This document shows positions 3,179-55,297 of a stretch of 64,000 nucleotides of DNA, one piece after another. The translations under genes were made by a program, and so were the position numbers. This DNA is from Mobula birostris. Lineage: Eukaryota. Position 1 is the first letter of the stretch. The number at the start of each line of letters is the position of its first letter. The notes under the pieces were generated by a model. The model was given only the letters and a program-made list of their open reading frames with translations, did no database searches and had not been told where the DNA came from. The stretch spans positions 70,305,717 to 70,369,716 of the forward strand of contig NC_092380.1 of the NCBI RefSeq assembly GCF_030028105.1. The letters are read 5' to 3'.

Positions 3179-3483
3179 TCAAATTAATATCAAGTCATAC
3201 TGTTTCATATGTTCTTCCAAATTAAATTCAATTTGAACTTGGATGTGTTGTTTATCATTTGGTTTTGGTGTATAAGTTAGTTCAGTGGTGAAACCGCCAC
3301 CATTGTGAAATGGCTTGTTTGTAACGTACTCCTTTTCATCAAAAGGATAAGCATCTCTGTACCAGATGATATGAGCCTCTTCAACAGCACATCCTTTAAC
3401 ATCGCAAGAAAGAGTTACTGGTTGACCAATTTTCGGACTTTTTGTGAGGCACTTTATTTCTGAAACCTTCTCCCATACATCTG
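3179..3483 (-). CDS. Terminal exon: Ig C-type domain lacking the F-strand Cys, then stop
   Basis: ttctctttttcag acceptor (NAGNAG). Open frame DVWEKVSEIKCLTKSPKIGQPVTLSCDVKGCAVEEAHIIWYRDAYPFDEKEYVTNKPFHNGGGFTTELTYTPKPNDKQHIQVQIEFNLEEHMKQYDLILI*. Resembles the 30904-31233 exon (KISEIK..P.IGKPLTLSC). Not in the ORF track. Confidence 0.85.
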
Positions 3484-6400: not shown

Positions 6401-9400
6401 GCGCGAAAAAAGCAGCACATGTCCCGAGCAGTCGCTGTCCCCCGGATTCGGAACTGCATTCTCGCCAGCATTGCTTAAACACGTGCCTGTGAGTAGCTGT
6501 TTGCAAGATGAGTTCTAAGGTATCGGAAAAGCCTGAAAGAGCTCGTAAGGGTGTTATGCTTAGCATAAATCTAGACATAATTAAGCGTTTTGATCATGGT
6601 GAACGAAGTAAGGACAAAGTGAGTTTGGCTTGTGGAAGTTGACGAAGATGATGTTGAAGAGGTTTCGCATCTCATGATCAAGAAACTAATAAATGAAGAG
6701 CTGATGCAATTAGAAGAGGAAAGGATAACAATCAAAATCAAATGCAGAAGCAAGCGGACGGAACATGAAGCAACTGCGTGAGATTTTCGCTGCAATGATA
6801 AACTACGACCTTAATTTTGAAAGGGTACGTCAGTTTAGGGTATATTTGCAAGATGGTTTACAAAGAACTGTATGATAGAAAAATGCGCGAGGCTAGCAGT
6901 CAAGCATATTGTCGTTTTTCAAGCCTTCCACATCAGTCACAGCAGACGACGAACCTCGACCTTCGACATCGAGGCAGGCAGACATAGAAAATGACCTGCC
7001 TTCCATGATTAACAATAAGATGACACCCCCCCGTGTCCCACCACCCCAGTGGACCCAACCCCCGGGCCACGGAGAGATACTGATTCACGGAGAATGGAGC
7101 GGTAGCTGGGAGGCATCCAGCAATCTTTAAGAAAAAAAAAAGCTGAAATAAACAAGCTAATTAATTAGGTGCCGCCCGGCAATTGCCTCTGTTCTAGGCT
7201 GACATTTACGTGCTGGGCTGCACCTAATTAATTAGCATGTTTGTTTTGGCTTTTTTCTTAACGACGTGTTGGATGCCTCATGGCTACCGCTGTACCCCTG
7301 CATGCTTCGCGGATCGGTATCGGTTCGCTGCCCGGAGGGTGGGGGCCATTGCACCACCCCAACCTCTCATGACTCAGCTTAACACACTATCATCAGTGTG
7401 CTCTGCGCTGACTTCCCAATTCCGGTAAGTGATACTACACTGTACATACATTATTTCTACCTTATATAGGCTGTGTATTTTTATGTGTTATTTGGTACGA
7501 TTTGGCAGCTTCATAGCTTAAAGGTTACTGGAGAGAGTGTTTTGCCAAGAGCGCTTGCGTGAGATTTTCTGCCGAGAGTGCTTGTGCTGTGTTTCTGCCA
7601 AGAGCACTTGCATGAGATTTTCACTACGGAGAACAGTGCAGGCAATCATTGTAGAGAAGTATTTCTAATTTATATAGGCTGTGTTTCTATCATATCATTC
7701 CTGCTTTTACTATATATTCCTGTTATTTTAGGTTTTATGTGTTATTTGGCATGATTTGGTAGGTTACTTTTGGGTCTGCGAATGCTCACAAATGTAAGGG
7801 GGTTTTGATTTTTATGTTTCTGCGGAGGCTAATTAAAATGGCGTCTTTGTTATGTTAATCTGGGGAATGCGGCTTTGTTGTGTTAAACACTGAGAAAGTT
7901 TGCGCTAACAGTTTGTTTTTGCTTTAGAGTCTGATAAGAGAGTGCTATTAACCAATTGGGATAGTTGTTATGGTTTTGGTGTATTTGAAGATACTGTATG
8001 CGCGGGGTTTTGCGGGAGAGCGAGACAGAGGATGGACGAGGTGCTGTGAGTCCGCTAACGAGGTCGGACCCTGAGCGGGACGCTCGGCGAGGAGATGGAG
8101 ACGGACTCGTGTGGAGCGTCTGGTCGACCACCGTTGTTGGTCCCAGGCGGCCGGTCGAGGTGGTCCGAGGGGGTCGCAGGGTGACGAAGAAGGTCCTTGA
8201 GCTCCAACGGTTTTTGTGCACGAAGAGATTGAACTTTGATAAGTGTGGCGCCTTTTATTTTCCTTTTATATTTTATTCTCTTTTAATTATATAGTTCCAG
8301 TAATATCTATAAACTGTATATCATTTAATTGCATCTGGTGTATTGTCTGTTATTTGGGTGGGGTGGGGTACCTCACACAGCATCCACACAAACGAATTAT
8401 CCAGTTTGGCGGGGCCGAGGCTGTTTCCCTAGACGACAGCGAGCCGAGCGACCCTGAGGGTGGCCGGGGGGGTTACACAAATTTTTCCCATATAAGTAAA
8501 TGGTATTTGCTTCTTCGCTTTACAACATTCTGGCTTATGAACCGTTTCATAGGAATACTCTACCTTCGGATAGCGGGGGAAACCTGTACAGCGATAAGTG
8601 AGTTTAGTTGTTAATGCAGTAGTCACAAATATGTATCAGATGAAAGTGTAGGCAAGATTCTTGACAACAGAGTCAGTATTCATTGCCTTGTGGAAGAAAA
8701 GGGAAGTGATCTTGCTTTAAAATGGAGGCCTAAAGCGATTACATGCATGTTAAGACATGGAAGTTGGCACCAGAATCCACCATAAAAATCTAGCCCACAT
8801 CAGAATAATTGAAGAGTGGATGACATGACAGAGCCTCAAGGGAAAAGTAGTTCACCGTAAGGTGCTCAAGTCTCTGTTTGGAGATGACTACTTCATTGAT
8901 ATATAATCAGGAGAAACAGAAGGTATACAAATGATGTGAGAAATTTAATTTTGTAAAGCTTAAGTAGATCTGTATTTGGCTCTATCACTGTGTTTTGTCA
9001 TCAGCTAAAGAACAGTGGAAATTTATTGGAAATAGGCACCCAGGAAATGAAGGCAGCAAACTGACAGGGCACTGAAATGGACTGGCAGCCTGTATACAAC
9101 AACTCAAATTCACCATTCCAAATACTAATGCTTATCTCATTTGTAAAAATCTAAAATTCTACTTTGCCCCAATAATTGAATTCAAATAAATGAACACTTT
9201 ACCTTCACTTGTTGCTCTATTGCTGCCATCTTCCTTGTCAGCATCATCTGTAGGGGGAAAAATAGTTTAATAAAACCCAACATTAGTCAAATCAAATTAG
9301 CTCTTAGAAATTTAAAACACTGATTATCTCATCTAACCAGATCTTAAACATCTGTATCCACCTACAATCATCTATCCCCAGCATTAGAAAAAAAATCCAC

Positions 9401-12400
9401 ACCCAGTTTAGTCAATGGGAGGACTTGATATGAACTGAATGGTTCAATTAATATTGTGTTAAGTTTAAAATAAATGATCATTGCATGTATTACTTTATTG
9501 AACTGAGTCACATGAACACACAAGCACTCTGCACTGCTCCCTGTTACAAATGATGGTGAGGACGTGGCTATGGAGTAGACAAAAGTGTGGGATACATGCT
9601 GAAAAAGATTATTGACACCAGAGTAGGGATTCACTGCTTCTTGGAAGAAAAGGGAAGTGATCCTGTTTTAACATGAATCCCTTAAGGGTAAAATGCATGT
9701 TCAGGCCTGGAAGGTGGCACTAGAATATACCATGAAAATCCAGTCCATGTTAGAATACATGAAGAGTGGACCACCTGACAGGGCCAAGGGAAAAGCACAT
9801 GATCCTGCTCCAGCTGCACATAGTTTACAGTGAGGAACTGCATTGTCTCTTTGGAGAGGACCACCTCTTTGATCTTTATTCATCTGATCAGACAAACATA
9901 GGTGTTCAAATGACAGGGAAAAATTAATTTGTAAAACTTAACTAGATCAGTATTTGGCTCGGAGTGTATTTCTGTCATCATTTCACAAACTATAGAAATT
10001 TATTGGATATGAGCACCCAAGAAATGAAGGCAGCAGACTGACAAATTATTGAAATGGACTGGCAGCTTGTATACAAGAGCTCAAATTCACCATTCCAAAT
10101 ACCAATGCTTGTCTCAAGTGCAATAATATAAAATTATACTTTGACCCAATAATGTGTTTCAAGTAAACCATGCCTAGTTCAGGAACATCCCAAAATGATC
10201 ACTTTACCCTCATCTTTTGCTCTACTGCTGCCATTGGTATGTTGTGGGAGATGGAAGATCTCTGGCTGTGTGCCCAGAGACCCGAGTTCTTAGGGCACAG
10301 AGCTCAGAAAAAACGATGCAAAGGACTTTTAACATTGTAAATCAGTGAGTTGTTTGTTATGTCTTCCTTCTCACTGTGAAACAGGGACATCTCTTTTTCC
10401 CTGATTAGGGAGAGAGGAGGGGAAGGGGGGGAAGGGAGAGAGAGGGGGGGAAGGGAGAGAGGGGAGGAAGGGAGAGGGGGGGGAGGGAGAGGGGGGGGGA
10501 GGGAGAGGGGGGGGAGGGAGAGGGGGGGAAGGGAGAGAGGGGGGAGAGGGAGAGGGAGAGAGAGAGAGAGAGACACACACACACACACAGCCCGTGGTGT
10601 ATCGAATTACCAGGTGAACAAGTAGATTTTGGGATACTGCAAGCCTGTGTCTTTACTGATGCTTCGCTGCACACTTGAGTGCTTGGTGGAGGGCGCCAAT
10701 GATTTTTTAACTGGTGTGGGAAGGGGGATTGCTCCTTTGCTGCTGCTTATGCATGGGAGTAGGGAGCTGGGGGGGGGGTCTTTGGGGTTCTAACATTTAA
10801 CTATCATTCATTCTCTGGGGCACTCCTCTGTTTTCACGGATGGTTGCAAAGAAAAAGAATTTCAGGATGTATATTGTATACATTTCTGACATTAAATGGA
10901 CCCATGAAACCTTTAAAATCTTCCTTACAGTCAGAGTCTGTAGGTTAAAACAAAAAGTGGTTTAATAAAACCTGACATTAGTCAAATCAAATTAGCTCTT
11001 TAACTTTAAAACATGAATTATTTCATCTAACTACATGTTAAATTGTAACCACCTAAAATTATCTATCCATAGCATTAGGAAAAAAAACACACCGTCTCAG
11101 TTAATAGGAGGTTTGATATGAAGTAAATGGTTAACGTTATATTTTGTTAAGTTTAAAATAAATGATTACTGCATCTATAACAACTTTATTGAAATGTGTC
11201 ACATGAACACACGAGTACTCTGCCCTACAACTGATGGTGAGCACATGGCTGTGCAGGGGATCTACAAGTCCATGGGGATGCACCTGGATGACAGTCTTGA
11301 GTGGAGCACCAACACAGAAGCGGTGTCCAAGAAGGGCCAGAGTTGCCTCTGCTTCTGGAGGAGATTTGAGGTCTTTTGCAGTATGCAGGCTTCTCCTTCA
11401 CTCCTTTGACCACTCTGTTGTCACCAGTACAATCTTCTATGTGGTAGTGTGCTGGGGCAATGGCATCCACACGGGTGAGGCCATCAGGCTCAATAAGCTG
11501 TTTAGAAAGGCTGGCTCTGTCATAGGAGTCTAACTGGACACACGGGAGGCTGTGGTAGAACAATGGACACTACGAAAAATCATGGCAATTCTGGACAATG
11601 ATTCTCGCCCTCTATATGGCACCTTGGCTGAACGGAGGAGAATTTTTAGTAATAGACTAAGACAACTGTGCTGTTCCAAGAGTGCTATATAAATTCATTC
11701 TACCTTCGGCCATTAGGATCAATAATGAGTCAGCTAGCAGCGGGTAGGTAATGACTCCCTCCTGTTAGACTGTTTGAAGTACCAGATTTTTTAAATTCTA
11801 TTTCCCTTCTGATATTTATATCTGTGCACTTTTAATGCTACTCTGACACTGTAATTTCCTTTGGGATCAATAAAGTATCTATATCTGTCTAGTACAAGAT
11901 CTCCCTTGAAGGCGTAATTTGAATTCTTTCCTCCTAACTTACTTTCTTCATGAACCACCTCACATTTGATACAACTCCCATGATCTGATTCTGCTGGTAT
12001 AAACTTCATGCTTGTAATTGATAAATTCAGACCATCTTCTGCAATCCCAGGATGACATGTTTTTGCACCTTTCCATCTTTACATCATGTTACTTAGATTT
12101 TTGCAGGAAAATAGCCCTTCATGGAGATGCTAAATGTTGCAGACTTTTTACTTCGAACTAGTTCCGGATCACTTTTAATATCAGATATCTCCTCTCAACT
12201 TAAACCTATGCTCTCGTTTTCAATTCCCTTTCATGGGAAAATGATTTGTGCATTCACAATGGAGGCCTAAAGCAAATACAAGCATATTCAGGCATGGAAG
12301 TTGGCACCAGAATCTACCATGAAAATCTAGCCTAGGTTAGAATATTTGAAGAGTGGACCACTGACAGAGCCGAAGGGAAAAGCACATGATCCTTCTACAA

Positions 12401-15400
12401 ATGCTCATATTTCATCGTAAGGTGCCAAAGAGTCTGGAAATGCGTACCCCACTGATTTTCACTCATCTGATCAGGAGAAATAAGAGTTATACAAATGACA
12501 GAAAAAGTTCATTTTTGCAAAGCTTAATCTGATCTGTATTTGGTTTTTTGAGTGTACTTTTATCATCTAAAGAACTGTGGAAATTTATTTGATTTGGGCA
12601 TCCAGGAAATGAAGGTGGCAGACTGACAGAAAATTGAAATGGGCTGGCAGTTTGTAGACAACAGCTCAAATTCACAATTCCAAATACTAATGATTGTCTC
12701 GTGTAATAATGTAAAAATCCACATTGATCTAATGATGGACTTCAAGTAAAACATATCCAGTTCAGGAACTTCCCACAATGAACACTTCACCTTCAATTTT
12801 TTCTTTACTGCTGCCATCTTTCTCAGAGATACAGTCTGTAGGTAAAAAAGAAAGTAGTTTAAGAAAACTTCAGATTCGTCCAATCAAATTGACTCTTGTA
12901 AATTTCAAACATTAATTATTTCATCCAACCATATGTTAAACAACTCCAACCACTTAGAATTATTTATTCATGGCATAGGAAAAAAACGCTCCGTTTCAGG
13001 CAATATGAGGTTTGATATGAAGTAAATAGTTAAATTAATATTCTGTTAAGTTTAAAATAAATGATCATGTCATCTAAAATTTATTTAGACTTTATTTAAA
13101 ACTTTATTGAAATATGCCTCATGAACAGACTGGTGCTCTGCATTGCTCCCTGTTACAAGTGATGATGAGGACCTACAAGTACCTGGCGGTGCACCTGGAT
13201 GACAGACTTGAGTGGAGTGCCAACACAGCGGCTGTGTCCTGGAAGGGCCAGAGTCACCTCTACCTCTTGAGAAGACTAAGGCCCTTTGGAATATGCTGGC
13301 GTCTCTTTCACCTATTCTAACAGTCTAATGTCACCAGTACAACCTTCCATGCAGTGGTGTGCTGGGGCAATGGCATCAACACGGATGATGCCAACAGGCT
13401 CAATAAACAATAAAATTTAACATTGAATATCTCCTCTTAATGATCTCTAGTTTTTCCATTCCCTTGTTGGGAAAAAGATTCATACATTCATCCTGACTAT
13501 GCCCCATATGATATTATACACCTCTTGGATCACCTCTCAGTTTCCAATACACCACAAATGAAGTCCTAACCTGCTCAGCCTCTCCCTATAACTCACCCCC
13601 TTGAGTCCTGGCAACATTCTCATGAATCTGCTTTGCAATCTTTCCAGCCAATGTTATATTTTCTATAAGAGAGTAAATAAAGCTGTGCACAATACTCCAT
13701 GTGCAGCATTACCAACATCTTGTACAAGTGTAATGCAATGCCCTAGCCCTCTACATTCAATGCTCTAATGAAGGGTACCATGCCAAATATGCCTTCTTAT
13801 TCACATATCAACCTGTTATGTTCTCATAGGGACATTAAAAATATCACATCCACTCTAACCACACTCATCTGGACTATGCTTCTCCTTTCTAGCTATTCTC
13901 AACACAGTGGCTCACATGCCAGTTTACTCGTCTTGCCTCGTCAGCATTTCATGATCTGAACCATACTCATTCTCTCCATCCCATTCACTAGAGAAGAGTG
14001 ATAGTGATAAGGGAGTTTATTTATCAATGCAGAAGTCACAAATACACATCAGATGAAAGTGTGGGATGCATGCTCGGCAAGATTCTTGACAACAGAGTCA
14101 GTACGTATTTCCTTGTGGAAGAGAAAGGAAGTGACCTTGTTTTAAATTGGAGGCCTAAAGTGATTACAAGCATTTTCAGGTCAGGAAGTTGGCACCAGAA
14201 TGTACCATAATAATATCCAGCCCACGTTAGACTATTTGAAGAGTGGACAACATGACAAAGCCACAAGGGAAAAGTAGCTCACCGTTAGGTGCTCAAGTGT
14301 TTGTTTGGAGATGGCTACTTCGTTGATATTTACTTATACGATCAGGAGAAACAGGTATATACAAATGACATGAGAAATTTAATTTTGTAAAGATTAATCA
14401 GATTGTATTTGGCTCTTTCAGTGTATTCTTGTCATCATCTAAAGATCAGTAGAAATTTACTGGATATGGACACCCAAGAAATGAAGGCAGCAGACTGACA
14501 AGAGTTTTGAAATGGACTGGCAGCTTGTATACAACAGCTTAAATTCACCATTCCAAATACCAATGCACATCTCATGTGCAATAATATAAGATTCTACCTT
14601 GACCCAATAATGTGTTTCAAGTAAACCATGTCCAGTTCAGGAACTTCCCAAAATGATCACTTTATTTTCATCTTTTGCTCTACTGCTGCCATTGGTATGT
14701 CGTGGGAGATGGAAGATCTCCGGCTATGTGCCCAGAGACCCGAGCTCTTTGGGCACAGAGCTCGGAAAAAGTTATGCAGTGGACTGTTAGCATCATAAAA
14801 TCAGAAAATTGTTTGTTATGTCTCCCCACTTGCAGTGAAACAGGGACACCTCTTTTTCCCTTGAGAGGGGGGGAGAGAGGGGGGGAGAGGGGGGGGAGGG
14901 GGGGGGGAGGGGGGGAGAGAGCGCGCGAGCGAGCCTGTGGTGTATCAATCTACCAGATGAACAAGTAGACTTTGGGGTACTGCAAGCCTGTGTTTTTATT
15001 GATGCTTTGCTGCACTTTTGAGTGCTTGGTGGAGGGTGCCAATGATTTTTTAGCTGGTGTGGGAAGGGGAATTGTCCCTTTGCTGCTGCTTATGTATGGG
15101 AGTAGGGAGCTGGGGGGGGGGTCTTTGGGGTTCTAACATTTAACTATCATTCATTCTCTGGGGCACTCCTCTGTTTTCACGGATGGTTGCAAAGAAAAAG
15201 AATTTCAGGATGTATATTGTATACATTTCTGACATTAAATGGACCCATGAAACCTTTAAAATCTTCCTTACAGTCAGAGTCTGTAGGTTAAAACAAAAAG
15301 TGGTTTAATAAAACCTGACATTAGTCAAATCAAATTAGCTCTTTAACTTTAAAACATGAATTATTTCATCTAACTACATGTTAAATTGTAACCACCTAAA

Positions 15401-18400
15401 ATTATCTATCCATAGCATTAGGAAAAAAAACACACCGTCTCAGTTAATAGGAGGTTTGATATGAAGTAAATGGTTAACGTTATATTTTGTTAAGTTTAAA
15501 ATAAATGATTACTGCATCTATAACAACTTTATTGAAATGTGTCACATGAACACACGAGTACTCTGCCCTACAACTGATGGTGAGCACATGGCTGTGCAGG
15601 GGATCTACAAGTCCATGGGGATGCACCTGGATGACAGTCTTGAGTGGAGCACCAACACAGAAGCGGTGTCCAAGAAGGGCCAGAGTTGCCTCTGCTTCTG
15701 GAGGAGATTTGAGGTCTTTTGCAGTATGCAGGCTTCTCCTTCACTCCTTCGACCACTCTGTTGTCACCAGTACAATCTTCTATGTGGTGGTGTGCTGGGG
15801 CAATGGCATCCACACGGGTGATGCCATCAGGCTCAATAAGCTGTTCAGAAAGGCTGGCTCTGTCATAGGAGTCTAACTGGACACACGGGAGGCTGTGGTA
15901 GAACAATGGACACTACGAAAAATCATGGCAATTCTGGACAATGATTCTCGCCCTCTATATGGCACCTTGGCTGAACGGAGGAGAATTTTTAGTAATAGAC
16001 TAAGACAACTGTGCTGTTCCAAGAGTGCTATATAAATTCATTCTACCTTCGGCCATTAGGATCAATAATGAGTCAGCTAGCAGCGGGTAGGTAATGACTC
16101 CCTCCTGTTAGACTGTTTGAAGTACCAGATTTTTTAAATTCTATTTCCCTTCTGATATTTATATCTGTGCACTTTTAATGCTACTCTGACACTGTAATTT
16201 CCTTTGGGATCAATAAAGTATCTATATCTGTCTAGTACAAGATCTCCCTTGAAGGCGTAATTTGAATTCTTTCCTCCTAACTTACTTTCTTCATGAACCA
16301 CCTCACATTTGATACAACTCCCATGATCTGATTCTGCTGGTATAAACTTCATGCTTGTAATTGATAAATTCAGACCATCTTCTGCAATCCCAGGATGACA
16401 TGTTTTTGCACCTTTCCATCTTTACATCATGTTACTTAGATTTTTGCAGGAAAATAGCCCTTCATGGAGATGCTAAATGTTGCAGACTTTTTACTTCGAA
16501 CTAGTTCCGGATCACTTTTAATATCAGATATCTCCTCTCAACTTAAACCTATGCTCTCGTTTTCAATTCCCTTTCATGGGAAAATGATTTGTGCATTCAC
16601 AATGGAGGCCTAAAGCAAATACAAGCATATTCAGGCATGGAAGTTGGCACCAGAATCTACCATGAAAATCTAGCCTAGGTTAGAATATTTGAAGAGTGGA
16701 CCACTGACAGAGCCGAAGGGAAAAGCACATGATCCTTCTACAAATGCTCATATTTCATCGTAAGGTGCCAAAGAGTCTGGAAATGCGTACCCCACTGATT
16801 TTCACTCATCTGATCAGGAGAAATAAGAGTTATACAAATGACAGAAAAAGTTCATTTTTGCAAAGCTTAATCTGATCTGTATTTGGTTTTTTGAGTGTAC
16901 TTTTATCATCTAAAGAACTGTGGAAATTTATTTGATTTGGGCATCCAGGAAATGAAGGTGGCAGACTGACAGAAAATTGAAATGGGCTGGCAGTTTGTAG
17001 ACAACAGCTCAAATTCACAACTCCAAATACTAATGATTGTCTCGTGTAATAATGTAAAAATCCACATTGATCTAATGATGGACTTCAAGTAAAACATATC
17101 CGGTTCAGGAACTTCCCACAATGAACACTTCACCTTCAATTTTTTCTTTACTGCTGCCATCTTTCTCAGAGATACAGTCTGTAGGTAAAAAAGAAAGTAG
17201 TTTAAGAAAACTTCAGATTCGTCCAATCAAATTGACTCTTGTAAATTTCAAACATTAATTATTTCATCCAACCATATGTTAAACAACTCCAACCACTTAG
17301 AATTATTTATTCATGGCATAGGAAAAAAACGCTCCGTTTCAGGCAATATGAGGTTTGATATGAAGTAAATAGTTAAATTAATATTCTGTTAAGTTTAAAA
17401 TAAATGATCATGTCATCTAAAATTTATTTAGACTTTATTTAAAACTTTATTGAAATATGCCTCATGAACAGACTGGTGCTCTGCATTGCTCCCTGTTACA
17501 AGTGATGATGAGGACCTACAAGTACCTGGCGGTGCACCTGGATGACAGACTTGAGTGGAGTGCCAACACAGCGGCTGTGTCCTGGAAGGGCCAGAGTCAC
17601 CTCTACCTCTTGAGAAGACTAAGGCCCTTTGGAATATGCTGGCGTCTCTTTCACCTATTCTAACAGTCTAATGTCACCAGTACAACCTTCCATGCAGTGG
17701 TGTGCTGGGGCAATGGCATCAACACGGATGATGCCAACAGGCTCAATAAACAATAAAATTTAACATTGAATATCTCCTCTTAATGATCTCTAGTTTTTCC
17801 ATTCCCTTGTTGGGAAAAAGATTCATACATTCATCCTGACTATGCCCCATATGATATTATACACCTCTTGGATCACCTCTCAGTTTCCAATACACCACAA
17901 ATGAAGTCCTAACCTGCTCAGCCTCTCCCTATAACTCACCCCCTTGAGTCCTGGCAACATTCTCATGAATCTGCTTTGCAATCTTTCCAACCAATGTTAT
18001 ATTTTCTATAAGAGAGTAAATAAAGCTGTGCACAATACTCTATGTGCAGCATTACCAACATCTTGTACAAATGTAATGCAATGCCCTAGCCCTCTACATT
18101 CAATGCTCTAATGAAGGGTACCATGCCAAATATGCCTTCTTATTCACATATCAACCTGTTATGTTCTCATAGGGACATTAAAAATATCATATCCACTCTA
18201 ACCACACTCATCTGGACTATGCTTCTCCTTTCTAGCTATTCTCAACACAGTGGCTCACATGCCAGTTTACTCGTCTTGCCTCGTCAGCATTTCATGATCT
18301 GAACCATACTCATTCTCTCCATCCCATTCACTAGAGAAGAGTGATAGTGATAAGGGAGTTTATTTATCAATGCAGAAGTCACAAATACACATCAGATGAA

Positions 18401-21400
18401 AGTGTGGGATGCATGCTCGGCAAGATTCTTGACAACAGAGTCAGTACGTATTTCCTTGTGGAAGAGAAAGGAAGTGACCTTGTTTTAAATTGGAGGCCTA
18501 AAGTGATTACAAGCATTTTCAGGTCAGGAAGTTGGCACCAGAATGTACCATAATAATATCCAGCCCACGTTAGACTATTTGAAGAGTGGACAACATGACA
18601 AAGCCACAAGGGAAAAGTAGCTCACCGTTAGGTGCTCAAGTGTTTGTTTGGAGATGGCTACTTCGTTGATATTTACTTATACGATCAGGAGAAACAGGTA
18701 TACAAATGACATGAGAAATTTAATTTTGTAAAGATTAATCAGATTGTATTTGGCTCTTTCAGTGTATTCTTGTCATCATCTAAAGATCAGTAGAAATTTA
18801 CTGGATATGGACACCCAAGAAATGAAGGCAGCAGACTGACAAGAGTTTTGAAATGGACTGGCAGCTTGTATACAACAGCTTAAATTCACCATTCCAAATA
18901 CCAATGCACATCTCATGTGCAATAATATAAGATTCTACCTTGACCCAATAATGTGTTTCAAGTAAACCATGTCCAGTTCAGGAACTTCCCAAAATGATCA
19001 CTTTATTTTCATCTTTTGCTCTATTGCTGCCATTGGTATGTCGTGGGAGATGGAAGATCTCCGGCTATGTGCCCAGAGACCCGAGCTCTTTGCGCACAGA
19101 GCTCGGAAAAAGTTATGCAGTGGACTGTTAGCATCATAAAATCAGAAGATTGTTTGTTATGTCTCCCCACTTGCAGTGAAACAGGGACATCTCTTTTTCC
19201 TTTGGGGNNNNNNNNNNNNNNNNNNNNNNNNNNNNNNNNNNNNNNNNNNNNNNNNNNNNNNNNNNNNNNNNNNNNNNNNNNNNNNNNNNNNNNNNNNNNN
19301 NNNNNNNNNNNNNNNNNNNNNNNNNNNNNNNNNNNNNNNNNNNNNNNNNNGGGGGGGAGAGAGAGCCTGTGGTGTATCAATCTACCAGATGAACCAGTAG
19401 ACTTTGGGGTACTGCAAGCCTGTGTTTTTATTGATGCTTTGCTGCACTTTTGAGTGCTTGGTGGAGGGCGCCAATGATTTTTTAGCTGGTGTGGGAAGGG
19501 GAATTGTCCCTTTGCTGCTGCTTATGCGTGGGAGTAGGGAGCTGGGGGGGGGGGTCTTTGGGGTTCTAACATCTAACTATCATTCATTCTCTGGGGCACT
19601 CCTCTGTTTTCACGGATGGTTGCAAAGAAAAAGAATTTCAGGATGTATATTGTATACATTTCTGACATTAAATGGACCCATGAAACCTTTAAAATCTTCC
19701 TTACAGTTGGAGTCTGTAGGTTAAAACAAAAAGTGGTTTAATAAAAACTGACATTAGTCAAATCAAATTAGCTCTTATAACTTTAAAACATGAATTATTT
19801 CATCTAACTACATGTTAAATTGTAACCACCTAAAATTATCTATCCATAGCATTGGGAAAAAAAACACACCGACTCAGTTAATAGGAGGTTTGATATGAAG
19901 TAAATGGTTAACGTTATAATTTGTTAAGTTTAAAATAAATGATTACTGCATCTATAACAACTTTATTGAAATGTGTCACATGAACACACGAGTACTCTGC
20001 CCTACAACTGATGGTGAGCACATGGCTGTGCAGGGGATCTACAAGTCCATGGGGATGCACCTGGATGACAGTCTTGAGTGGAGCACCAACACAGAAGCGG
20101 TGTCCAAGAAGGGCCAGAGTTGCCTCTGCTTCTGGAGGAGATTTGAGGTCTTTTGCAGTATGCAGGCTTCTCCTTCACTCCTTCGACCACTCTGTTGTCA
20201 CCAGTACAATCTTCTATGTGGTGGTGTGCTGGGGCAATGGCATCCACACAGGTGAGGCCATCAGGCTCAATAAGCTGTTCAGAAAGGCTGGCTCTGTCAT
20301 AGGAGTCTAACTGGACACACGGGAGGCTGTGGTAGAACAATGGACACTACGAAAAATCATGGCAATTCTGGACAATGATTCTCGCCCTCTATATGGCACC
20401 TTGGCTGAACGGAGGAGAATTTTTAGTAATAGACTAAGACAACTGTGCTGTTCCAAGAGTGCTATATAAATTCATTCTACCTTCGGCCATTAGGATCAAT
20501 AATGAGTCAGCTAGCAGCGGGTAGGTAATGACTCCCTCCTGTTAGACTGTTTGAAGTACCAGATTTTTTAAATTCGATTTCCCTTCTGATATTTATATAT
20601 GTGCACTTTTAATGCTACTCTGACACTGTAATTTCCTTTGGGGTCAATAAAGTATCTATATCTATCTAGTACAAGATCTCCCTTGAAGGCGTAATTTGAA
20701 TTCTTTCTTCCCAACTTTCTTTCCTCATGAACCACCTCACATTTGATACAACTCCCATGATCTGATTTTGCTGGTATAAACTTTATGCTTCTAATTGATA
20801 AATTCAGACCATCTTCTGCAAACTCAGGATGACCTGTTTTTGCGCCTTTCCATCTTTATATCATGTTACTTTGATTTTCGCAGGAAAATAGCCCTTCATG
20901 GAGATGCTAAATGTTGCAGGCTTTTTACCTTGAACTATTTCGGGATCACTTTTAATATCAGATATCTCCTCTCAACTTAAACCTGTGCTCTCTTGTTTTC
21001 AATTCCCTTTCAAGGGAAAATGATTTGTGCATTCACAACGGAGAACTAAAGCAATTACAACCATGTTCAGGCATGGAAGATGGCACCAGAATCTACCATG
21101 AAAATCTAGCCTAGGTTAGAATATTTGAAGAGTGGACCACTGACAGAGCCGAAGGGAAAAGCACATGATCCTTCTACAAATGCTCATATTTCACCATAAG
21201 GTGCCAAAGAGTCTGGAAATGAGAATCCCATTGATTTTTACTGATCTGATCAGGAGAAATAAGAGGTATACAAATGACAGAAAAAGTTCATTTCTGTAAA
21301 GCTTGATCTGATCTGTATTTGGTTTTTTGAGTGTACTTTTATCATCTAAAGAACTGTGGAAATTTATTTGATTTGGGCACCCAGGAAATGAAGGTGGCAG

Positions 21401-54400: not shown

Positions 54401-55297
54401 GCAAGCACCTCCTACTCCACCTGGGTAGAGTTTGCAGGTACCACATTGGCCTCAACAATACCTCAGAAATACAGGGGTTGCAAGTTAGCTTTTACCCTGA
54501 GGAATTGCCAAAGAAGGGGTAAAAACGGGCACAGAGGGGAGAGGAATTCATCAAGACAAATTACAGCAAACAAAAACCACTTCACAATCCAATCTGGAAT
54601 TATGACAAATTTTGACTGGTGTCAACCAAATCCGTAAGTGGCCCAATTATATAAATTTAACCAACATAAATGAAATAATAACCTGAACATCCTATTTTAG
54701 AGGCGGAAAACGTTTTTATGGGTAGGGCACTCTAGTTAGAGCGTAGTTTAAAATGTATAATCATACCACAAAAGAAATATCACAAACAAGAGAAAATCTG
54801 CAGATGCTGGAAATCCAAGTAACTCAGAAATTGCTGGAGGACTCAGTAGGCCAGGCAGCAACCATGGAAAAGAATACAGTCGACGCTCTTGCTGAATGGT
54901 CTCGGCCCAAAACATCGACTGCACTTTAATCCCTAACCGGGTTGGCCTGCTGAGTTCCTCCAACATTTTTTGTGTGTTGCCATAAAATAAATAACCCATC
55001 CGCGTTTTACTTGAAAGAATTGACAATAAACACACTACAAAAGTTTTAAGGTTCTTTGTCCAATTCTCGAGAATGATCTTTTAAAGGAAACCTTAGCCAG
55101 ACTCCATTTTATGCCCCGCCGTTTAAACCAGTTTTACCCAGAGGAGAGCAGTAACCGCACTCTGACACCTTACCTGCCGCAGGGGTGAGCCACACAACAA
55201 TCAGAAACAACACCAGGGGTCCCGAAGCCCCTGACCACCGGTATCGCCGCGACCCCGCCCAAGCGCGGCTGGAAGAAAAACCCAGCTCCGCCGCCAT
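3179..55297 (-). CDS. Multi-exon IgSF type I membrane protein gene: SP-V-C1-TM-(C1)x4-acidic micro-exon linker-Ig; B7-H6/tapasin-like ectodomain; about 950 aa
   Basis: Exons 55174-55297, 38208-38549, 36598-36918, 35651-35767, 33477-33917, 32678-33058, 32031-32342, 30904-31233, 21572-21616, 17134-17178, 12791-12835, 9203-9247, 3179-3483. All have AG/GT boundaries and all internal exons are phase 1-1 with lengths divisible by 3. They sum to 2853 nt (951 codons including stop) with no internal stop. Micro-exon inclusion is inferred. Confidence 0.8.
3690..4190 (-). mobile_element. CR1 LINE 3' fragment
   Basis: ERVQSRFMRMFSGLREVSYRERLSRLGLHLLEYRRLRGD is the CR1 ORF2 C-terminal motif; similar pieces at about 4890-5125, 13440-13760, 17785-18100 and 22820-23140. 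Confidence 0.8.
4325..4885 (+). mobile_element. Gypsy fragment: LTR 3' end, PBS and gag start
   Basis: accagactccaa..gggtacgtaaca matches the LTR end at 44620-44681; tgggggcc PBS; MEVSIDEFLGQPAAEALDDA resembles MVIEEFLKVPTLEALEDA at 44781. Confidence 0.75.
5531..5880 (+). mobile_element. GC-rich insertion, probably a retroelement 5' region
   Basis: Begins ggagaagatggcgg, is CpG-rich and abruptly interrupts the AT-rich repeat unit; family not identified. Confidence 0.4.
6283..8586 (+). mobile_element. Tigger/pogo-like non-autonomous DNA transposon
   Basis: Termini CAGGTGTCCCTCGC and GCGGGGGAAACCTG, TA duplication; removing it restores gaagagacatacagcgataag of the repeat unit; acidic transposase C-terminal remnant VDEDDVEEV. 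Confidence 0.85.
7793..8477. mobile_element. Solo LTR inside the Tigger-like element
   Basis: TGTAAG..TTACA termini and 4-bp TSD CAAA; the flanks rejoin to match the sister Tigger copy at about 40840. Confidence 0.8.
9203..9247 (-). CDS. 45-nt micro-exon ((D)DADKEDGSNRATSE)
   Basis: ttttccccctacag acceptor and GAAG|gtaaag donor; phase 1-1, open. Confidence 0.7.
10208..10937 (-). pseudogene. 45-nt micro-exon split by an insertion of about 680 bp
   Basis: Halves ACTCTGACTGTAAGGAAGAT (10918-10937) and ATGGCAGCAGTAGAGCAAAAGATGAGG (10208-10234) rejoin, sharing the AT, to a 45-nt exon ((D)SDCKEDGSSRAKDE). Acceptor and donor are intact. Confidence 0.75.
10406..10587 (+). repeat. G-rich (GGGGGGAGGGAGA-like) tract followed by (GA)n(CA)n
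   Basis: Many runs of 3 or more G separated by short loops (G-quadruplex-capable), then gagaga and cacaca. Confidence 0.9.
11255..11890 (+). mobile_element. Rex1/Babar-type LINE 3' fragment (copies at about 13160, 15598, 17503, 20032, 21910, 24905)
   Basis: YKYL.VHLDD.LEWS.NT..V..KGQS.L, VVCWGNGI and RLNKLFRKAGSVIG motifs; aataaa plus tatc tail abutting the dead Ig exon. Confidence 0.8.
11891..12197 (-). pseudogene. Dead Ig C1 exon, copy 1
   Basis: EISDIKSDPELVRSKKSATFSISMKGYFPAKI*VT*CKDGK, then a frameshift, then ..SITSMKFIPAESDHGSCIKCEVVHEE..NYAFKGDLVL. Flanked by CR1 and Rex-type insertions. Confidence 0.8.
12791..12835 (-). CDS. 45-nt micro-exon ((D)CISEKDGSSKEKIE)
   Basis: tttttacctacag acceptor and GAAG|gtgaag donor; phase 1-1, open. 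Confidence 0.66.
14666..15280 (-). pseudogene. Split 45-nt micro-exon with lost donor
   Basis: Same insertion as at 10235-10917; the donor reads ataaag instead of gtaaag. Confidence 0.7.
16234..16540 (-). pseudogene. Dead Ig C1 exon, copy 2
   Basis: Same sequence as 11891-12197 shifted by 4343. Confidence 0.78.
17134..17178 (-). CDS. 45-nt micro-exon ((D)CISEKDGSSKEKIE), duplicate copy
   Basis: tttttacctacag acceptor and GAAG|gtgaag donor; identical to 12791-12835 at an offset of 4343. Confidence 0.58.
19007..19713 (-). pseudogene. Split 45-nt micro-exon with lost donor (spans the N gap)
   Basis: Copy of 14666-15280. Confidence 0.68.
19208..19350. other. Assembly gap (143 N) at a G-rich tract
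   Basis: N run flanked by gggg and ggggggagagag, at the position of the G tracts seen at about 10406-10560 and 14866-14915. Confidence 0.98.
20668..20974 (-). pseudogene. Dead Ig C1 exon, copy 3
   Basis: EISDIKSDPEIVQGKKPATFSISMKGYFPAKIKVT*YKDGK, same frameshift, then ..KFIPAKSDHGSCIKCEVVHEE. Confidence 0.8.
21572..21616 (-). CDS. 45-nt micro-exon ((D)HTSKKDGSSKAIIE)
   Basis: ttttttacctacag acceptor and GAAG|gtaaag donor; phase 1-1, open. Confidence 0.68.
22515..22818 (-). pseudogene. Dead Ig C1 exon, copy 4
   Basis: EIPDIKSDPELLQAK*PATFS.. with stops; the ORF track shows its 3' half ISSITSIKFTPAKTDHGSCIKCEVVH. Confidence 0.78.
24035..24600 (-). pseudogene. Split 45-nt micro-exon with 5' half lost
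   Basis: 3' half ..GGCAGCAGTAGAGCAAAAGATGAAG|gtaatg is retained; same insertion; no acceptor half recognisable. Confidence 0.62.
25251..25450 (-). pseudogene. Dead Ig C1 exon, partial copy 5
   Basis: WYKDGK, frameshift, then ISSITSIKFTPAKTDHGSCIKCEVV; 5' part deleted. Confidence 0.7.
26651..26695 (-). pseudogene. Degenerate 45-nt micro-exon
   Basis: Homologous to 9203-9247, but a small deletion removes the acceptor AG (ttacaATGCTG) and a further 1-nt deletion is present. Confidence 0.65.
27651..28200 (-). pseudogene. Split 45-nt micro-exon with 5' half lost
   Basis: As 24035-24600; donor gtaaag is retained. Confidence 0.62.
28425..28705 (-). pseudogene. Dead Ig C1 exon, partial copy 6
   Basis: KKPATFSNPLKGYVPVKIKVMWYKDGK, same frameshift, then ..SITSIKFTPAKTDHVSCIKCELVH. 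Confidence 0.75.
29724..29825 (-). CDS. Candidate 102-nt exon ((V)SEMIGTILLLEEFKYHKELKVLCKMLGPVNMQI)
   Basis: tttttaactggcacag acceptor and A|gtaatt donor; phase 1-1 and open. Sits where the repeated intron unit begins. No recognisable domain. Confidence 0.33.
30904..31233 (-). CDS. Post-TM C1-like Ig exon lacking the F-strand Cys
   Basis: ttttatgtctag acceptor and G|gtgaat donor, 330 nt. Motifs LSCRAYGFFP, FWFKD, SGLYSRSSRW, FKMQILH (M at the Cys position). Confidence 0.88.
32031..32342 (-). CDS. Post-TM Ig C1-set exon
   Basis: cttttccag acceptor and A|gtaagt donor, 312 nt. Motifs LSCQISAFYP, VKWLKDG, YTCQVAHESL. Confidence 0.9.
32678..33058 (-). CDS. Post-TM Ig C1-set exon
   Basis: cttttctaag acceptor and G|gtatac donor, 381 nt. 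Motifs LSCSVSGFKP, IIW, KTYSIASVL, YLCSILH. Confidence 0.9.
33477..33917 (-). CDS. Post-TM C1-like Ig exon with both canonical Cys replaced and a long central insertion
   Basis: ttttgattag acceptor and G|gtaaat donor, 441 nt. (V)PPKI start, SSFRP (C1 GFYP equivalent), VEVSVRIHP, IEVQHQAL (F strand-H motif without Cys). Confidence 0.82.
35651..35767 (-). CDS. Transmembrane exon ((V)SEPESDSTAAVGAAFIGGFVLCFLFAAGPLAYWWRFQA)
   Basis: ggttttctaag acceptor and GCAG|gtaata donor; 117 nt, phase 1-1, open. Short acidic stalk, about 25 hydrophobic residues, then YWWR interface residues. Confidence 0.85.
36598..36918 (-). CDS. Ig C1-set exon (ectodomain)
   Basis: ttttaatacag acceptor and G|gtatgt donor, 321 nt. 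Motifs VRCDATGFYP, IFW, DGTFNVSS, YKCTVRH; N-glycan sequons NGT and NVS. Confidence 0.92.
37190..38170 (+). mobile_element. CR1 LINE 3' portion
   Basis: Decayed ORF2 C-terminus (ggtggtaaggaag, ttctggttgtcccca, gaggggaaacctgat) and the CR1 3' end gggccaaatggcttgttcct..tgttct. Confidence 0.75.
38208..38549 (-). CDS. Ig V-set exon
   Basis: ttgcatttag acceptor and G|gtaaga donor, 342 nt. Motifs TLEC, VKW, GDASLYLPNIQLNEAGEYICVV (V-set D-x-G-x-Y-x-C). Confidence 0.92.
39075..40380 (-). mobile_element. Gypsy 3' end: integrase tail, polypurine tract and 3' LTR
   Basis: Minus strand RRSQRVRTPLDRLAY, then GGGGGGAGAG PPT, then TGTAACACCCT at 40143; the LTR is homologous to 51211-52001. Confidence 0.7.
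39870..40106 (+). mobile_element. tRNA-derived SINE in the LTR
   Basis: B-box GTTCGAATCC, A-rich tail and 10-bp TSD ACAGCATAGC (39860-39869 / 40107-40116). Confidence 0.85.
40487..42345 (+). mobile_element. Tigger-like element (outer, truncated)
   Basis: TA-CAGGTGTCCCCCGC start; the sequence ..ttctatggTA resumes as TAttggaaaagcctgaaagagc at 42298, matching the 6283 copy. Confidence 0.75.
40742..42297 (-). mobile_element. Tigger-like element (inner, complete ends, opposite orientation)
   Basis: Ends (T)AGGTTTCCCCCGC and GCGGGGGACACCTG; TA TSD at 40740-40741 / 42298-42299. Confidence 0.82.
42712..49296 (+). mobile_element. Tc1-family transposon with long IR/DR-type TIRs, transposase disrupted
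   Basis: CAAACCCCATTTCCAGAAAAGTTGGGA..TCCCAACTTTTCTGGAAATGGGGTTTG, TA TSD, TIRs over 200 bp with a repeated aagttggga site. Transposase from ATG 43071 with WSDE, FQQDNA and SPIE; stop at about 43620; Gypsy insertion. Confidence 0.93.
43851..48830 (+). mobile_element. Gmr1-like Gypsy LTR retrotransposon, internally deleted
   Basis: LTRs 43851-44681 and 47997-48830 (TG..CA), TSD GTAG, PBS tggggatctcgtccgcgat (tRNA-Pro-like), PPT gaaggatagggg. Gag has a SCAN-like region and CYNCGKAGHFASRC; protease DTA; integrase H-H-C region precedes RT (YIGD) and RNase H (YTDHNPL). Confidence 0.92.
50040..52001 (-). mobile_element. Gypsy 5' end: LTR (about 51211-52001) and decayed PNMA-type gag
   Basis: The LTR starts TGTAGCACCCT. 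Gag pieces FKEKLLSFLQSE.., GEEEYEAWAEQT and KLSDYIFRLGKLL..LMEQVVKG. Confidence 0.72.
52030..52420 (+). mobile_element. CR1 LINE 3' fragment
   Basis: gagactgagaggagccttat, gaaagatttaaaagggacctgagggg and other CR1 ORF2/3' motifs. Confidence 0.7.

What the first reader, a model, noticed from the sequence alone, without database searches (positions are those of the whole stretch)
3179..55297. B7-H6/tapasin-like receptor whose predicted cytoplasmic tail is built from five Ig C1-type domains
Seen: a clean 117-nt TM exon (35651-35767) sits between the first C1 exon and four more C1-type exons plus a terminal Ig exon. No second hydrophobic segment follows. Established: C1-set domains are normally extracellular or luminal (Ig, TCR, MHC, tapasin, SIRP, B7-H6), and human B7-H6 is V-C1-TM with a non-Ig tail. 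Inference: with a cleaved leader and one TM, about 650 residues including five Ig folds face the cytosol. This would be an immune receptor with an intracellular C1 array, possibly a scaffold or decoy. I do not recognise a described family with this layout, but could not search.
Basis: partly seen in the sequence, partly recalled or inferred. Interest (0 to 1): 0.92.

Follow-up and report, generated by a model that had tools for sequence, protein, structure and literature searches.

The report
B7-H6 homologue with post-membrane Ig tail
This manta-ray gene is a relative of the natural-killer-cell ligand B7-H6 in which a membrane anchor sits in the middle of the protein, so by the usual rules five antibody-type (C1) domains lie inside the cell; the layout is conserved from chimaeras to reptiles and I found no description of it.

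Summary
Thirteen phase-1 exons on the minus strand splice into an intact 950-aa ORF. It is letter-identical to RefSeq XP_072128567.1, "uncharacterized protein" of Mobula birostris.

The layout is leader, V, C1, TM, four Ig exons, four 45-nt micro-exons and a terminal Ig exon. No second hydrophobic segment follows. The assembly gap is intronic, inside a 4.34-kb tandem repeat.

V-C1 is a B7-H6 (NCR3LG1) homologue, not tapasin-like. The same V-C1-TM-(Ig)n layout occurs in chimaera, sharks, rays, sturgeon, bichir, coelacanth, lungfish, amphibians, turtles, squamates and crocodilians. None of these has a C-terminal TM.

A cytosolic tail is supported by:
- a strong positive-inside charge bias at the TM;
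- loss of the canonical disulfide in 61% of post-TM domains, against none in V or C1a;
- N-glycosylation sequons at chance level.

It is not proven. D4 and D5 always keep their cysteines, the tail evolves fast (dN/dS about 0.8-1), and a few predicted isoforms in other species skip the TM exon. I found no published description, but the key 2012 B7H6 paper was not readable.

The parts
55174..55297 (-). Exon 1: ATG and signal peptide (MAAELGF...LIVVWLTPAA), phase-1 donor CAG|gtaagg
   Evidence: Identical to the N-terminus of P0099.
38208..38549 (-). V-set exon, B7-H6-like, no J motif
   Evidence: Pfam V-set E 7e-8. The V-C1 pair's best solved match is human B7-H6, E 1e-33; Foldseek TM 0.85-0.91.
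36598..36918 (-). C1a: extracellular C1-set exon
   Evidence: Pfam C1-set E 5e-11. Cys pair kept in 30/30 homologues. N-glycosylation site FNVSS kept in 15/25.
35651..35767 (-). 117-nt phase 1-1 exon encoding the single transmembrane anchor (STAAVGAAFIGGFVLCFLFAAGPLAYWW, then RFQA)
   Evidence: RNA joints 36598>35767 and 35651>33917 in 4 runs. KD 2.31. Positive-inside flanks across the family. AF2 helix 282-299.
33477..33917 (-). D3: degenerate C1-like Ig domain directly after the TM. Both canonical Cys are absent here (W and I instead). It has a disordered 25-aa insert.
   Evidence: No Pfam hit. phmmer finds 65 homologues with this domain at about residues 280-330. Matched by the family HMM. 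AF2 beta-sandwich, pLDDT 82-91.
32678..33058 (-). D4: C1-set domain with conserved Cys pair and GFKPRPL motif
   Evidence: Pfam C1-set E 8e-7. Cys kept in 26-28/30. RNA joints.
32031..32342 (-). D5: canonical C1-set domain (YTCQVAHESL)
   Evidence: Pfam C1-set E 1e-14. Cys kept in 29-30/30. RNA shows the donor at 32031.
30904..31233 (-). D6: C1-set domain with B-strand Cys but Met at the F-strand Cys position
   Evidence: Pfam C1-set E 9e-8. F-strand Cys in 0/30 homologues.
21572..21616 (-). Micro-exon 1 (45 nt, ..KKDGSSKAIIE)
   Evidence: Part of the 950-aa ORF identical to P0099. AF2 disordered, 791-853.
17134..17178 (-). Micro-exon 2 (45 nt), identical to micro-exon 3
   Evidence: RefSeq isoform X3 (P0100) lacks one such 15-aa unit.
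12791..12835 (-). Micro-exon 3 (45 nt)
9203..9247 (-). Micro-exon 4 (45 nt, ..DKEDGSNRATSE)
3179..3483 (-). Terminal Ig exon with stop codon. There is no hydrophobic segment; the protein ends ...QYDLILI.
   Evidence: Weak Pfam Ig hits only. Homologous C-terminal domain in Narcine, Latimeria and others. AF2 pLDDT 72-91.
19208..19350 (.). Assembly gap, intronic, inside the tandem repeat
10589..22154 (.). About 4.34-kb tandem repeat units inside the long last-but-one introns. Each carries a micro-exon and a dead D8-type Ig exon.
   Evidence: units 98-99.6% alike
11794..28801 (-). Six decayed copies of a D8-type Ig exon (at about 12.0, 16.4, 20.8, 22.7, 25.4 and 28.6 kb), with frameshifts and stop codons. 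They are not in the mRNA model.
   Evidence: tblastn with Narcine P0005 residues 888-987. Three-frame translations show the stops and the frame change.

Best explanation
This is the Mobula birostris member of the non-mammalian B7-H6 (NCR3LG1) family, a type-I membrane protein.

Proposed topology. A cleaved leader puts the V-C1 ectodomain outside the cell. By homology that ectodomain is a ligand for an NKp30-type receptor. A single stop-transfer anchor is encoded by the 117-nt exon. The remaining 650 or so residues therefore face the cytosol. They are four C1-derived Ig domains (D3-D6), a disordered acidic and Ser-rich linker made of four micro-exons, and a terminal Ig domain.

Proposed function. 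I propose the tail is a disulfide-independent structural array. It would be a rod or pairing module that dimerises, clusters or anchors the ligand under the membrane, rather than an enzymatic signalling domain.

Shown:
- the exon structure
- the single mRNA
- the Ig folds (predicted)
- B7-H6 homology of the ectodomain
- conservation of the layout over roughly 450 million years (my dating of the chimaera-to-tetrapod span; no tool gave it)

Inferred:
- the cytosolic location, from topology rules, charge bias, cysteine loss and sequon statistics

Speculative:
- the scaffold or pairing function
For: Gene model:
- The 950-aa ORF from 13 exons is identical to an independent RefSeq model.
- RNA contigs of 4 runs join C1a-TM-D3-D4-D5-D6.

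Topology:
- There is one strong TM and no later one, in this protein and in nearly all of about 100 homologues.
- TM flanks across 31 sequences: outside KR 61 / DE 90; inside KR 100 / DE 38.
- The canonical Cys pair is kept in 30/30 V and C1a domains. The F-strand Cys is present in 1/30 D3 and 0/30 D6. 61% of 196 post-TM domains lack the pair.
- Extra cysteines in the tail vary between close species.
- N-glycosylation sequons before the TM: 59 observed against 46 expected, with one site kept in 15/25. After the TM: 109 against 113.5, with no deeply kept site.

Folds and homology:
- AF2 gives beta-sandwiches for all seven domains, pLDDT 80-93.
- The ectodomain matches human B7-H6: E 1e-33, TM-score 0.85-0.91.
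- The tail's best solved matches are SIRP-alpha C1 domains (best, E 3e-18), then Ig heavy-chain constant and UrIg2 domains, E about 1e-17.

Distribution:
- The layout is present from Callorhinchus to Alligator, turtles and squamates, and in the Xenopus gene cluster.
Against: - No experiment on topology exists, and no dedicated predictor (DeepTMHMM, SignalP) could be run.
- To my knowledge C1-set domains have never been shown in the cytosol.
- D4 and D5 keep both cysteines in essentially every species, as if a disulfide still mattered.
- The tail is Cys-rich, and the Cys-parity test was uninformative.
- The tail evolves as fast as the ectodomain. dN/dS is 0.80 against 0.68 in zebra shark versus whale shark, and about 1 in Mobula versus Hypanus. 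This is more usual for exposed immune domains than for cytosolic scaffolds.
- Predicted isoforms without the TM exon exist in Heterodontus, Lepidochelys and Varanus. They would put the whole array outside the cell.
Confidence: 0.62

Rival explanations
1. Cassette-TM model. The 117-nt phase 1-1 exon is optional. Skipping it gives a secreted V-(C1)n protein in which all the Ig domains are extracellular. Selection on that soluble form is then what preserves the array. In the membrane form the tail is a passenger.
For: - Skipping is in frame.
- Predicted isoforms lacking the TM exon occur in Heterodontus (P0117), Lepidochelys (P0127, which skips TM plus D3) and Varanus (P0131).
- D4 and D5 keep their disulfide cysteines.
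- dN/dS of 0.8-1 is typical of exposed immune domains.
- The tail's closest relatives are extracellular C1 domains.
Against: - In Mobula the TM-included path is the main one. It is continuous in X3 and X5, and no C1a>D3 joint is among the best-supported joints.
- All three M. birostris and both M. hypostoma RefSeq isoforms keep the TM.
- 42 of 52 further long homologues keep it.
- Disulfide loss in D3, D6, D7 and D8 and chance-level sequons fit a secreted glycoprotein poorly.
Confidence: 0.2
2. Unconventional topology. The hydrophobic segment does not act as a stop-transfer anchor, or the tail is translocated by some other route. The array would then be luminal or extracellular even in the TM-containing protein.
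For: C1-set domains are otherwise always extracytosolic (established knowledge). D4 and D5 cysteines are conserved.
Against: - The uncharged span is 19-32 residues with KD 2.2-3.7 and a clear positive-inside bias in 31 sequences.
- It is too short for a hairpin.
- There is no second hydrophobic segment that could restart translocation.
Confidence: 0.08
3. Relic tail. An ancestral fusion of a B7-H6-like gene with a downstream multi-C1 gene left a tail that is transcribed and translated but has no function. Only V-C1-TM matters.
For: - dN/dS is near 1 in the tail.
- Domain number is plastic. D7 and D8 are lost here and dead D8 exons remain. D6 is present six times in a paralogue and D3-type domains seven times in Heterodontus.
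Against: - Tail ORFs of 650-900 codons are intact, with conserved phase-1 exons and domain-by-domain orthology, in dozens of species from chimaera to crocodilians.
- Fold-core residues are invariant or nearly so.
- The ectodomain, which is clearly functional, has the same dN/dS.
Confidence: 0.07

Closest known systems
Human B7-H6 (NCR3LG1), ligand of NKp30
   Same: Leader, V-set, C1-set and a single TM in the same order. The ray V-C1 (tested on the close homologue P0001) has it as best solved sequence match, E 1e-33. The model superposes at TM 0.85-0.91, rmsd 2.1-2.9 A, 33-34% identity. NCBI names the long-tailed reptile and amphibian homologues NCR3LG1.
   Different: The human tail is short and non-Ig. 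From my own knowledge (Brandt et al. 2009, not checked here) it is gag-related. Here the tail is five Ig domains plus a micro-exon linker. Binding to an NKp30-type receptor is untested.
SIRP-alpha / SIRP family (V-C1-C1-TM)
   Same: The tail domains' best solved matches are SIRP C1 domains, E 3e-18. The Atlas nearest cluster is an SHPS1 fragment.
   Different: In SIRP all Ig domains precede the TM and keep their disulfides. Here the C1 array follows the TM.
UrIg2 and Ig heavy chains (VJ + many C1 + C-terminal TM)
   Same: Long arrays of C1-set domains that expand by exon duplication (PMC12227049). Sequence similarity E 3e-17.
   Different: Those have a VJ-type V domain, a TM at the C-terminus and extracellular C domains. 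This gene has a B7-type V without a J motif and the TM after the first C domain.
Cytosolic Ig arrays (titin, obscurin, MyBP-C I-set domains)
   Same: Strings of disulfide-free Ig folds in a reducing compartment. Titin I65-I70 is the top Foldseek multi-domain hit.
   Different: Those are I-set domains of soluble sarcomeric proteins and have no sequence kinship with this tail. Here the domains are C1-set derived and tethered to a membrane ligand.
Tapasin / TAPBPR
   Same: Their V-like and C1 Ig parts give weaker matches, E 3e-14.
   Different: No tapasin N-terminal domain is present. The match is about 20 orders of magnitude weaker than to B7-H6.

Membership tests
B7-H6 / NCR3LG1 | V-set plus C1-set ectodomain most similar to B7-H6 among B7 members | tested here: met
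   phmmer against PDB: B7-H6 E 1e-33 against CD276 1e-16. Foldseek TM 0.85-0.91 to 3pv6, 3pv7, 6yjp and 4zso.
B7-H6 / NCR3LG1 | Type-I single-pass anchor directly after the C1 domain | tested here: met
   The 117-nt TM exon is spliced after C1a. Hydropathy and charge bias agree.
B7-H6 / NCR3LG1 | Short non-Ig cytoplasmic tail, as in the human protein | tested here: not met
   The tail is about 650 aa with five Ig domains.
B7-H6 / NCR3LG1 | Binds NKp30 (NCR3) | not testable with these tools
   Needs a binding assay with a ray NKp30-type receptor.
B7-H6 / NCR3LG1 | Orthology by synteny or phylogeny with mammalian NCR3LG1 | not tested
   The only evidence is NCBI's automatic naming of reptile and amphibian homologues.
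Pfam C1-set (PF07654) | Score above the gathering threshold of 21 bits | tested here: met
   C1a 43.2, D4 29.7, D5 54.9, D6 32.9 bits.
Pfam C1-set (PF07654) | The same threshold, for D3 and the terminal domain | tested here: not met
   D3 has no hit and the terminal domain scores 15.3 bits. Both are recognised by a family-built HMM and fold as beta-sandwiches.
Pfam C1-set (PF07654) | Canonical B-F disulfide | tested here: not met
   For D3, D6 and the terminal domain: W/I, C/M and C/V here. The F-strand Cys is present in 1/30 D3 and 0/30 D6 across the family. The pair is kept in C1a, D4 and D5.
Tapasin / TAPBPR | Tapasin N-terminal domain ahead of the Ig domains | tested here: not met
   The protein starts leader then V. 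There is no such region, and only Ig-part similarity, E 3e-14.
UrIg / UrIg2 / Ig heavy chain | VJ-type V domain and TM, if any, after the last C domain | tested here: not met
   The V ends ...SSQIVVLA with no FGxG J motif. The TM follows the first C domain. UrIg2 is described in PMC12227049.

The most novel reading that the evidence does not exclude
The C1-set Ig domain is the hallmark fold of Ig, TCR and MHC. Here it would have an ancient, conserved intracellular use. The ancestral B7-H6 of jawed vertebrates would carry a cytosolic array of 5-10 C1-derived domains under the membrane. Mammals would have lost or replaced this array. It could pair chains, or read out an intracellular state such as stress or a pathogen factor, and couple that state to display of an NK-cell ligand. 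The fast evolution of the tail would then reflect an intracellular arms race.
Probability: 0.3. Interest if true: 0.9.

Novelty: new variant of a known kind. Interest (0 to 1): 0.78.

Why it matters
B7-H6 is studied as a stress-induced tumour ligand for NKp30. Nothing I could find says that its non-mammalian counterparts carry a long Ig tail behind the membrane anchor.

If the tail is cytosolic, it would be, to my knowledge, the first C1-set array working in a reducing compartment. That bears on three things:
- how far the Ig fold can do without its disulfide;
- what B7-H6 did before mammals swapped its tail;
- how NK-ligand display may be coupled to the inside of the cell.

If instead the TM exon is a switch between membrane and secreted forms, this is an unusual way of making a soluble multi-Ig immune protein.

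Either way the gene family is large and clustered in Xenopus (several of the Xenopus homologues lie on one contig; the clustering itself is recalled from the 2012 abstract). It is fast-evolving and currently labelled "uncharacterized".

Tried and rejected
Models rejected:
- Two adjacent genes (V-C1-TM, then a separate Ig gene with its own leader). RNA contigs run through the TM exon into D3-D6, and there is no leader or Met in between.
- A second TM or a C-terminal anchor. None is found in this protein or in about 100 homologues.
- UrIg or UrIg2 identity. Those have a VJ domain and a C-terminal TM.
- Tapasin kinship. Only a weak Ig-part match.

Steps that led nowhere:
- The search for related loci on genome contigs. 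That collection is bacterial and archaeal, so there was nothing to find and the scan was wasted.
- The look-up of encoding contigs for P0001 and P0071. Not on record. P0069, P0078 and P0077 worked.
- The Cys-parity test per domain. It was uninformative because C1a itself carries a conserved third Cys.
- Short-range dN/dS from M. hypostoma differences. There were too few changes.
- Literature. Seven full-text searches found no description of a post-TM Ig array in B7-H6 homologues. The two most relevant papers are Flajnik et al. 2012, PMC3709836, and Ohta & Flajnik 2015, PMC4594805. Neither is held, so prior mention cannot be excluded.

Full report
**What is there**

Every exon after the leader has a polypyrimidine-AG acceptor and a GT donor in phase 1. 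The exons are:

- leader 55297-55174
- V 38549-38208
- C1a 36918-36598
- hydrophobic exon 35767-35651, exactly 117 nt
- D3 33917-33477
- D4 33058-32678
- D5 32342-32031
- D6 31233-30904
- terminal Ig exon 3483-3179

An earlier scan note pointed to 45-nt micro-exons. I found four with strong splice signals, at 21616-21572, 17178-17134, 12835-12791 and 9247-9203.

Joined, the 13 exons give an open 2853-nt CDS of 950 aa. That protein is letter-for-letter identical to P0099, RefSeq XP_072128567.1, "uncharacterized protein isoform X1 [Mobula birostris]". So the window is giant manta ray, and an independent annotation pipeline reached the same model.

**Assembly gap (tested first, as asked)**

N 19208-19350 lies inside the second copy of a roughly 4.34-kb tandem unit. 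Its flanks align colinearly with the neighbouring unit, 99.6% over 3163 bp on one side and 98.6% over 1126 bp on the other. The gap replaces a 63-nt CT-rich simple repeat.

The gap is in the intron between micro-exons 1 and 2. No exon or frame crosses it. What it leaves open is the number of repeat units, and so the number of identical micro-exons 2 and 3. RefSeq isoform X3 lacks one 15-aa unit.

**Transcripts**

RNA contigs from four runs were laid on 30880-36870. Three runs are organism A. One is organism B, whose differences match the M. hypostoma orthologue P0071.

All four also show 33477>33058 and 32678>32342, and organism A's three runs show a clean 32031>31233; organism B's contig joins there with two extra letters (table 5c).

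- In X3 one 2758-nt contig carries C1a-TM-D3-D4-D5-D6.
- In X5 one 4098-nt contig does the same and continues 1440 nt beyond D6.
- In X1 and X2 the contig breaks at the C1a/TM border. The break coincides with a low-depth unspliced-intron contig (depth 7-12 against 90-220).
- No C1a>D3 joint, which would show TM skipping, is among the best-supported joints listed.

The two-gene reading and the "always skipped" reading are therefore refuted for Mobula.

**Domains**

| Domain | Pfam result |
|---|---|
| V | V-set, E 7e-8 |
| C1a | C1-set, 43 bits |
| D4 | C1-set, 30 bits |
| D5 | C1-set, 55 bits |
| D6 | C1-set, 33 bits |
| Terminal | only weak Ig hits |
| D3 | none |

A family-built HMM recognises D3 and the terminal domain as the same kind of domain.

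AlphaFold2 with a 30-sequence alignment gives the following:

- beta-sandwiches with pLDDT 80-93 for all seven domains
- a helix at 282-299 for the anchor
- disorder for a 25-aa insert in D3
- disorder for the micro-exon stretch 791-853

**What the parts resemble**

The V-C1 ectodomain is a B7-H6 homologue.

| Solved match to V-C1 of the close homologue P0001 | E-value |
|---|---|
| Human B7-H6 | 1e-33 |
| CD276 | 1e-16 |
| TAPBPR | 3e-14 |

The model superposes on B7-H6 crystal structures at TM 0.85-0.91, rmsd 2.1-2.9 A and 33-34% identity. "Tapasin-like" should therefore be dropped.

The tail's best solved relatives are SIRP C1 domains, Ig heavy-chain constant domains and UrIg2, E about 1e-17 to 1e-18. 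UrIg2 itself is a different gene: VJ, nine C1 domains and a C-terminal TM (PMC12227049).

**The family**

An exhaustive phmmer search with the D3 exon found 65 cluster representatives. In most full-length ones the D3-like domain sits at about residues 280-330 of a 600-1200-aa protein.

The family occurs in:

- rays, skates and sharks
- Callorhinchus, including a UniProt entry (V9K7L7) that I believe is cDNA-derived
- sturgeon, reedfish, coelacanth and lungfish
- caecilians, salamanders and many anurans, including the Xenopus gene cluster
- turtles, geckos, monitor, wall lizard and crocodilians

Most are labelled "uncharacterized". Many reptile and amphibian ones are named "natural cytotoxicity triggering receptor 3 ligand 1".

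Nearly all full-length members have exactly one strong hydrophobic segment, at about 230-330 (about 495 in two skate proteins with a doubled V-C1). None has a C-terminal one.

Tail length varies through exon duplication and loss:

- Narcine, sharks and the coelacanth have D7, D8 and further domains.
- A Mobula paralogue has D6 six times.
- A Heterodontus paralogue has a D3-type domain seven times.
- In this window D7 is gone, and six decayed D8-type exons with frameshifts and stops sit in the tandem repeat.

**Is the tail cytosolic?**

Four lines of evidence support it.

1. Topology rules. There is a cleavable-looking leader, one anchor with a 19-32-residue uncharged span, and nothing that could restart translocation.
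2. Charge bias. Over 31 diverse sequences, the 15 residues before the anchor hold 61 K/R against 90 D/E. The 15 residues after it hold 100 K/R against 38 D/E. This is the classic positive-inside pattern.
3. Cysteines.

   | Domain | Canonical cysteines across 30 aligned homologues |
   |---|---|
   | V, C1a | both present in 30/30 |
   | D3 | F-strand Cys in 1/30; B-strand Cys in 17/30 |
   | D6 | F-strand Cys in 0/30 |
   | D7, D8 | each retain only one of the two |

   Overall 120 of 196 post-TM domains (61%) lack the pair. Extra cysteines in the tail differ between close species.
4. Sequons. Before the TM there are 59 observed against 46 expected, with FNVSS kept in 15/25. After the TM there are 109 against 113.5, with no deeply conserved site.

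Four points count against it.

- D4 and D5 keep both cysteines almost everywhere.
- Cys parity does not discriminate.
- The tail evolves as fast as the ectodomain.

  | Comparison | Result |
  |---|---|
  | Stegostoma vs Rhincodon | dN/dS 0.80 over 763 tail codons; 0.68 over 213 ectodomain codons |
  | Mobula vs Hypanus | about 1 in all domains |

- Predicted isoforms without the TM exon exist in Heterodontus, Lepidochelys (TM plus D3 skipped) and Varanus. Because the exon is phase 1-1, skipping it would give a secreted all-Ig protein.

Intact ORFs, conserved exon phases and near-invariant core residues across the whole range rule out a dead relic.

**Verdict**

The cytosolic location is the most likely reading, at about 0.6-0.7. 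The main rival is a TM-cassette model in which a secreted isoform explains why the array is preserved.

I propose a structural pairing or anchoring role for the tail. That step is speculative.

I found no description of this layout in the searchable literature. The 2012 B7H6 evolution paper and the 2015 review could not be read.

I class this as a new variant of a known kind: the B7-H6 family with an unprecedented post-membrane C1 array.

Noticed in passing
window 10589-22154 (units about 11701-16043 and 16044-20477; partial copies to about 28000): A 4.34-kb tandem repeat, with units 98-99.6% alike, carries both a used 45-nt micro-exon and a dead D8-type Ig exon. The micro-exon linker seems to have grown by duplication of a unit that once held a real Ig exon.
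   Followed up: partly
window 42400-48500, + strand, inside intron 1: Transposon debris in the 16.6-kb first intron. There is a Tc1/mariner-like transposase ORF (43059-43932) and an LTR-retrotransposon-like gag/pol region (ORFs 44936-46060, 46117-46584, 46622-47878). Near-identical 105-121-aa ORFs lie on each side (43992-44357 and 48138-48455).
   Followed up: no
window 33230-33375 and 34565-34790: Intronic interspersed repeats with RNA-contig depths up to about 140,000 and many chimeric joints. These are highly expressed repeat families (SINE-like), not part of the gene.
   Followed up: no
window 35250-36870 against 30904-33917: Divergence between M. birostris and M. hypostoma is uneven. It is about 4.5-4.8% in C1a and its downstream intron. 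It is about 1-1.7% in the TM-D3 intron and the D3-D6 exons. The TM exon differs at 8 of 39 residues. This could reflect old alleles, paralogue exchange at the 5' end, or homogenisation of the 3' end.
   Followed up: partly
P0106 / P0067 (Mobula paralogue), P0002 (Heterodontus): Paralogues in the same gene cluster have tails with one domain type multiplied: D6 six times in Mobula and a D3-type domain seven times in Heterodontus. The tail array is a hotspot of tandem exon duplication.
   Followed up: partly
C1a, residue C209 of the 950-aa protein (window about 36760): The extracellular C1 domain carries a third, nearly invariant cysteine (YVCTGA) besides the canonical pair. It is a candidate for an interchain disulfide in the ectodomain.
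   Followed up: no
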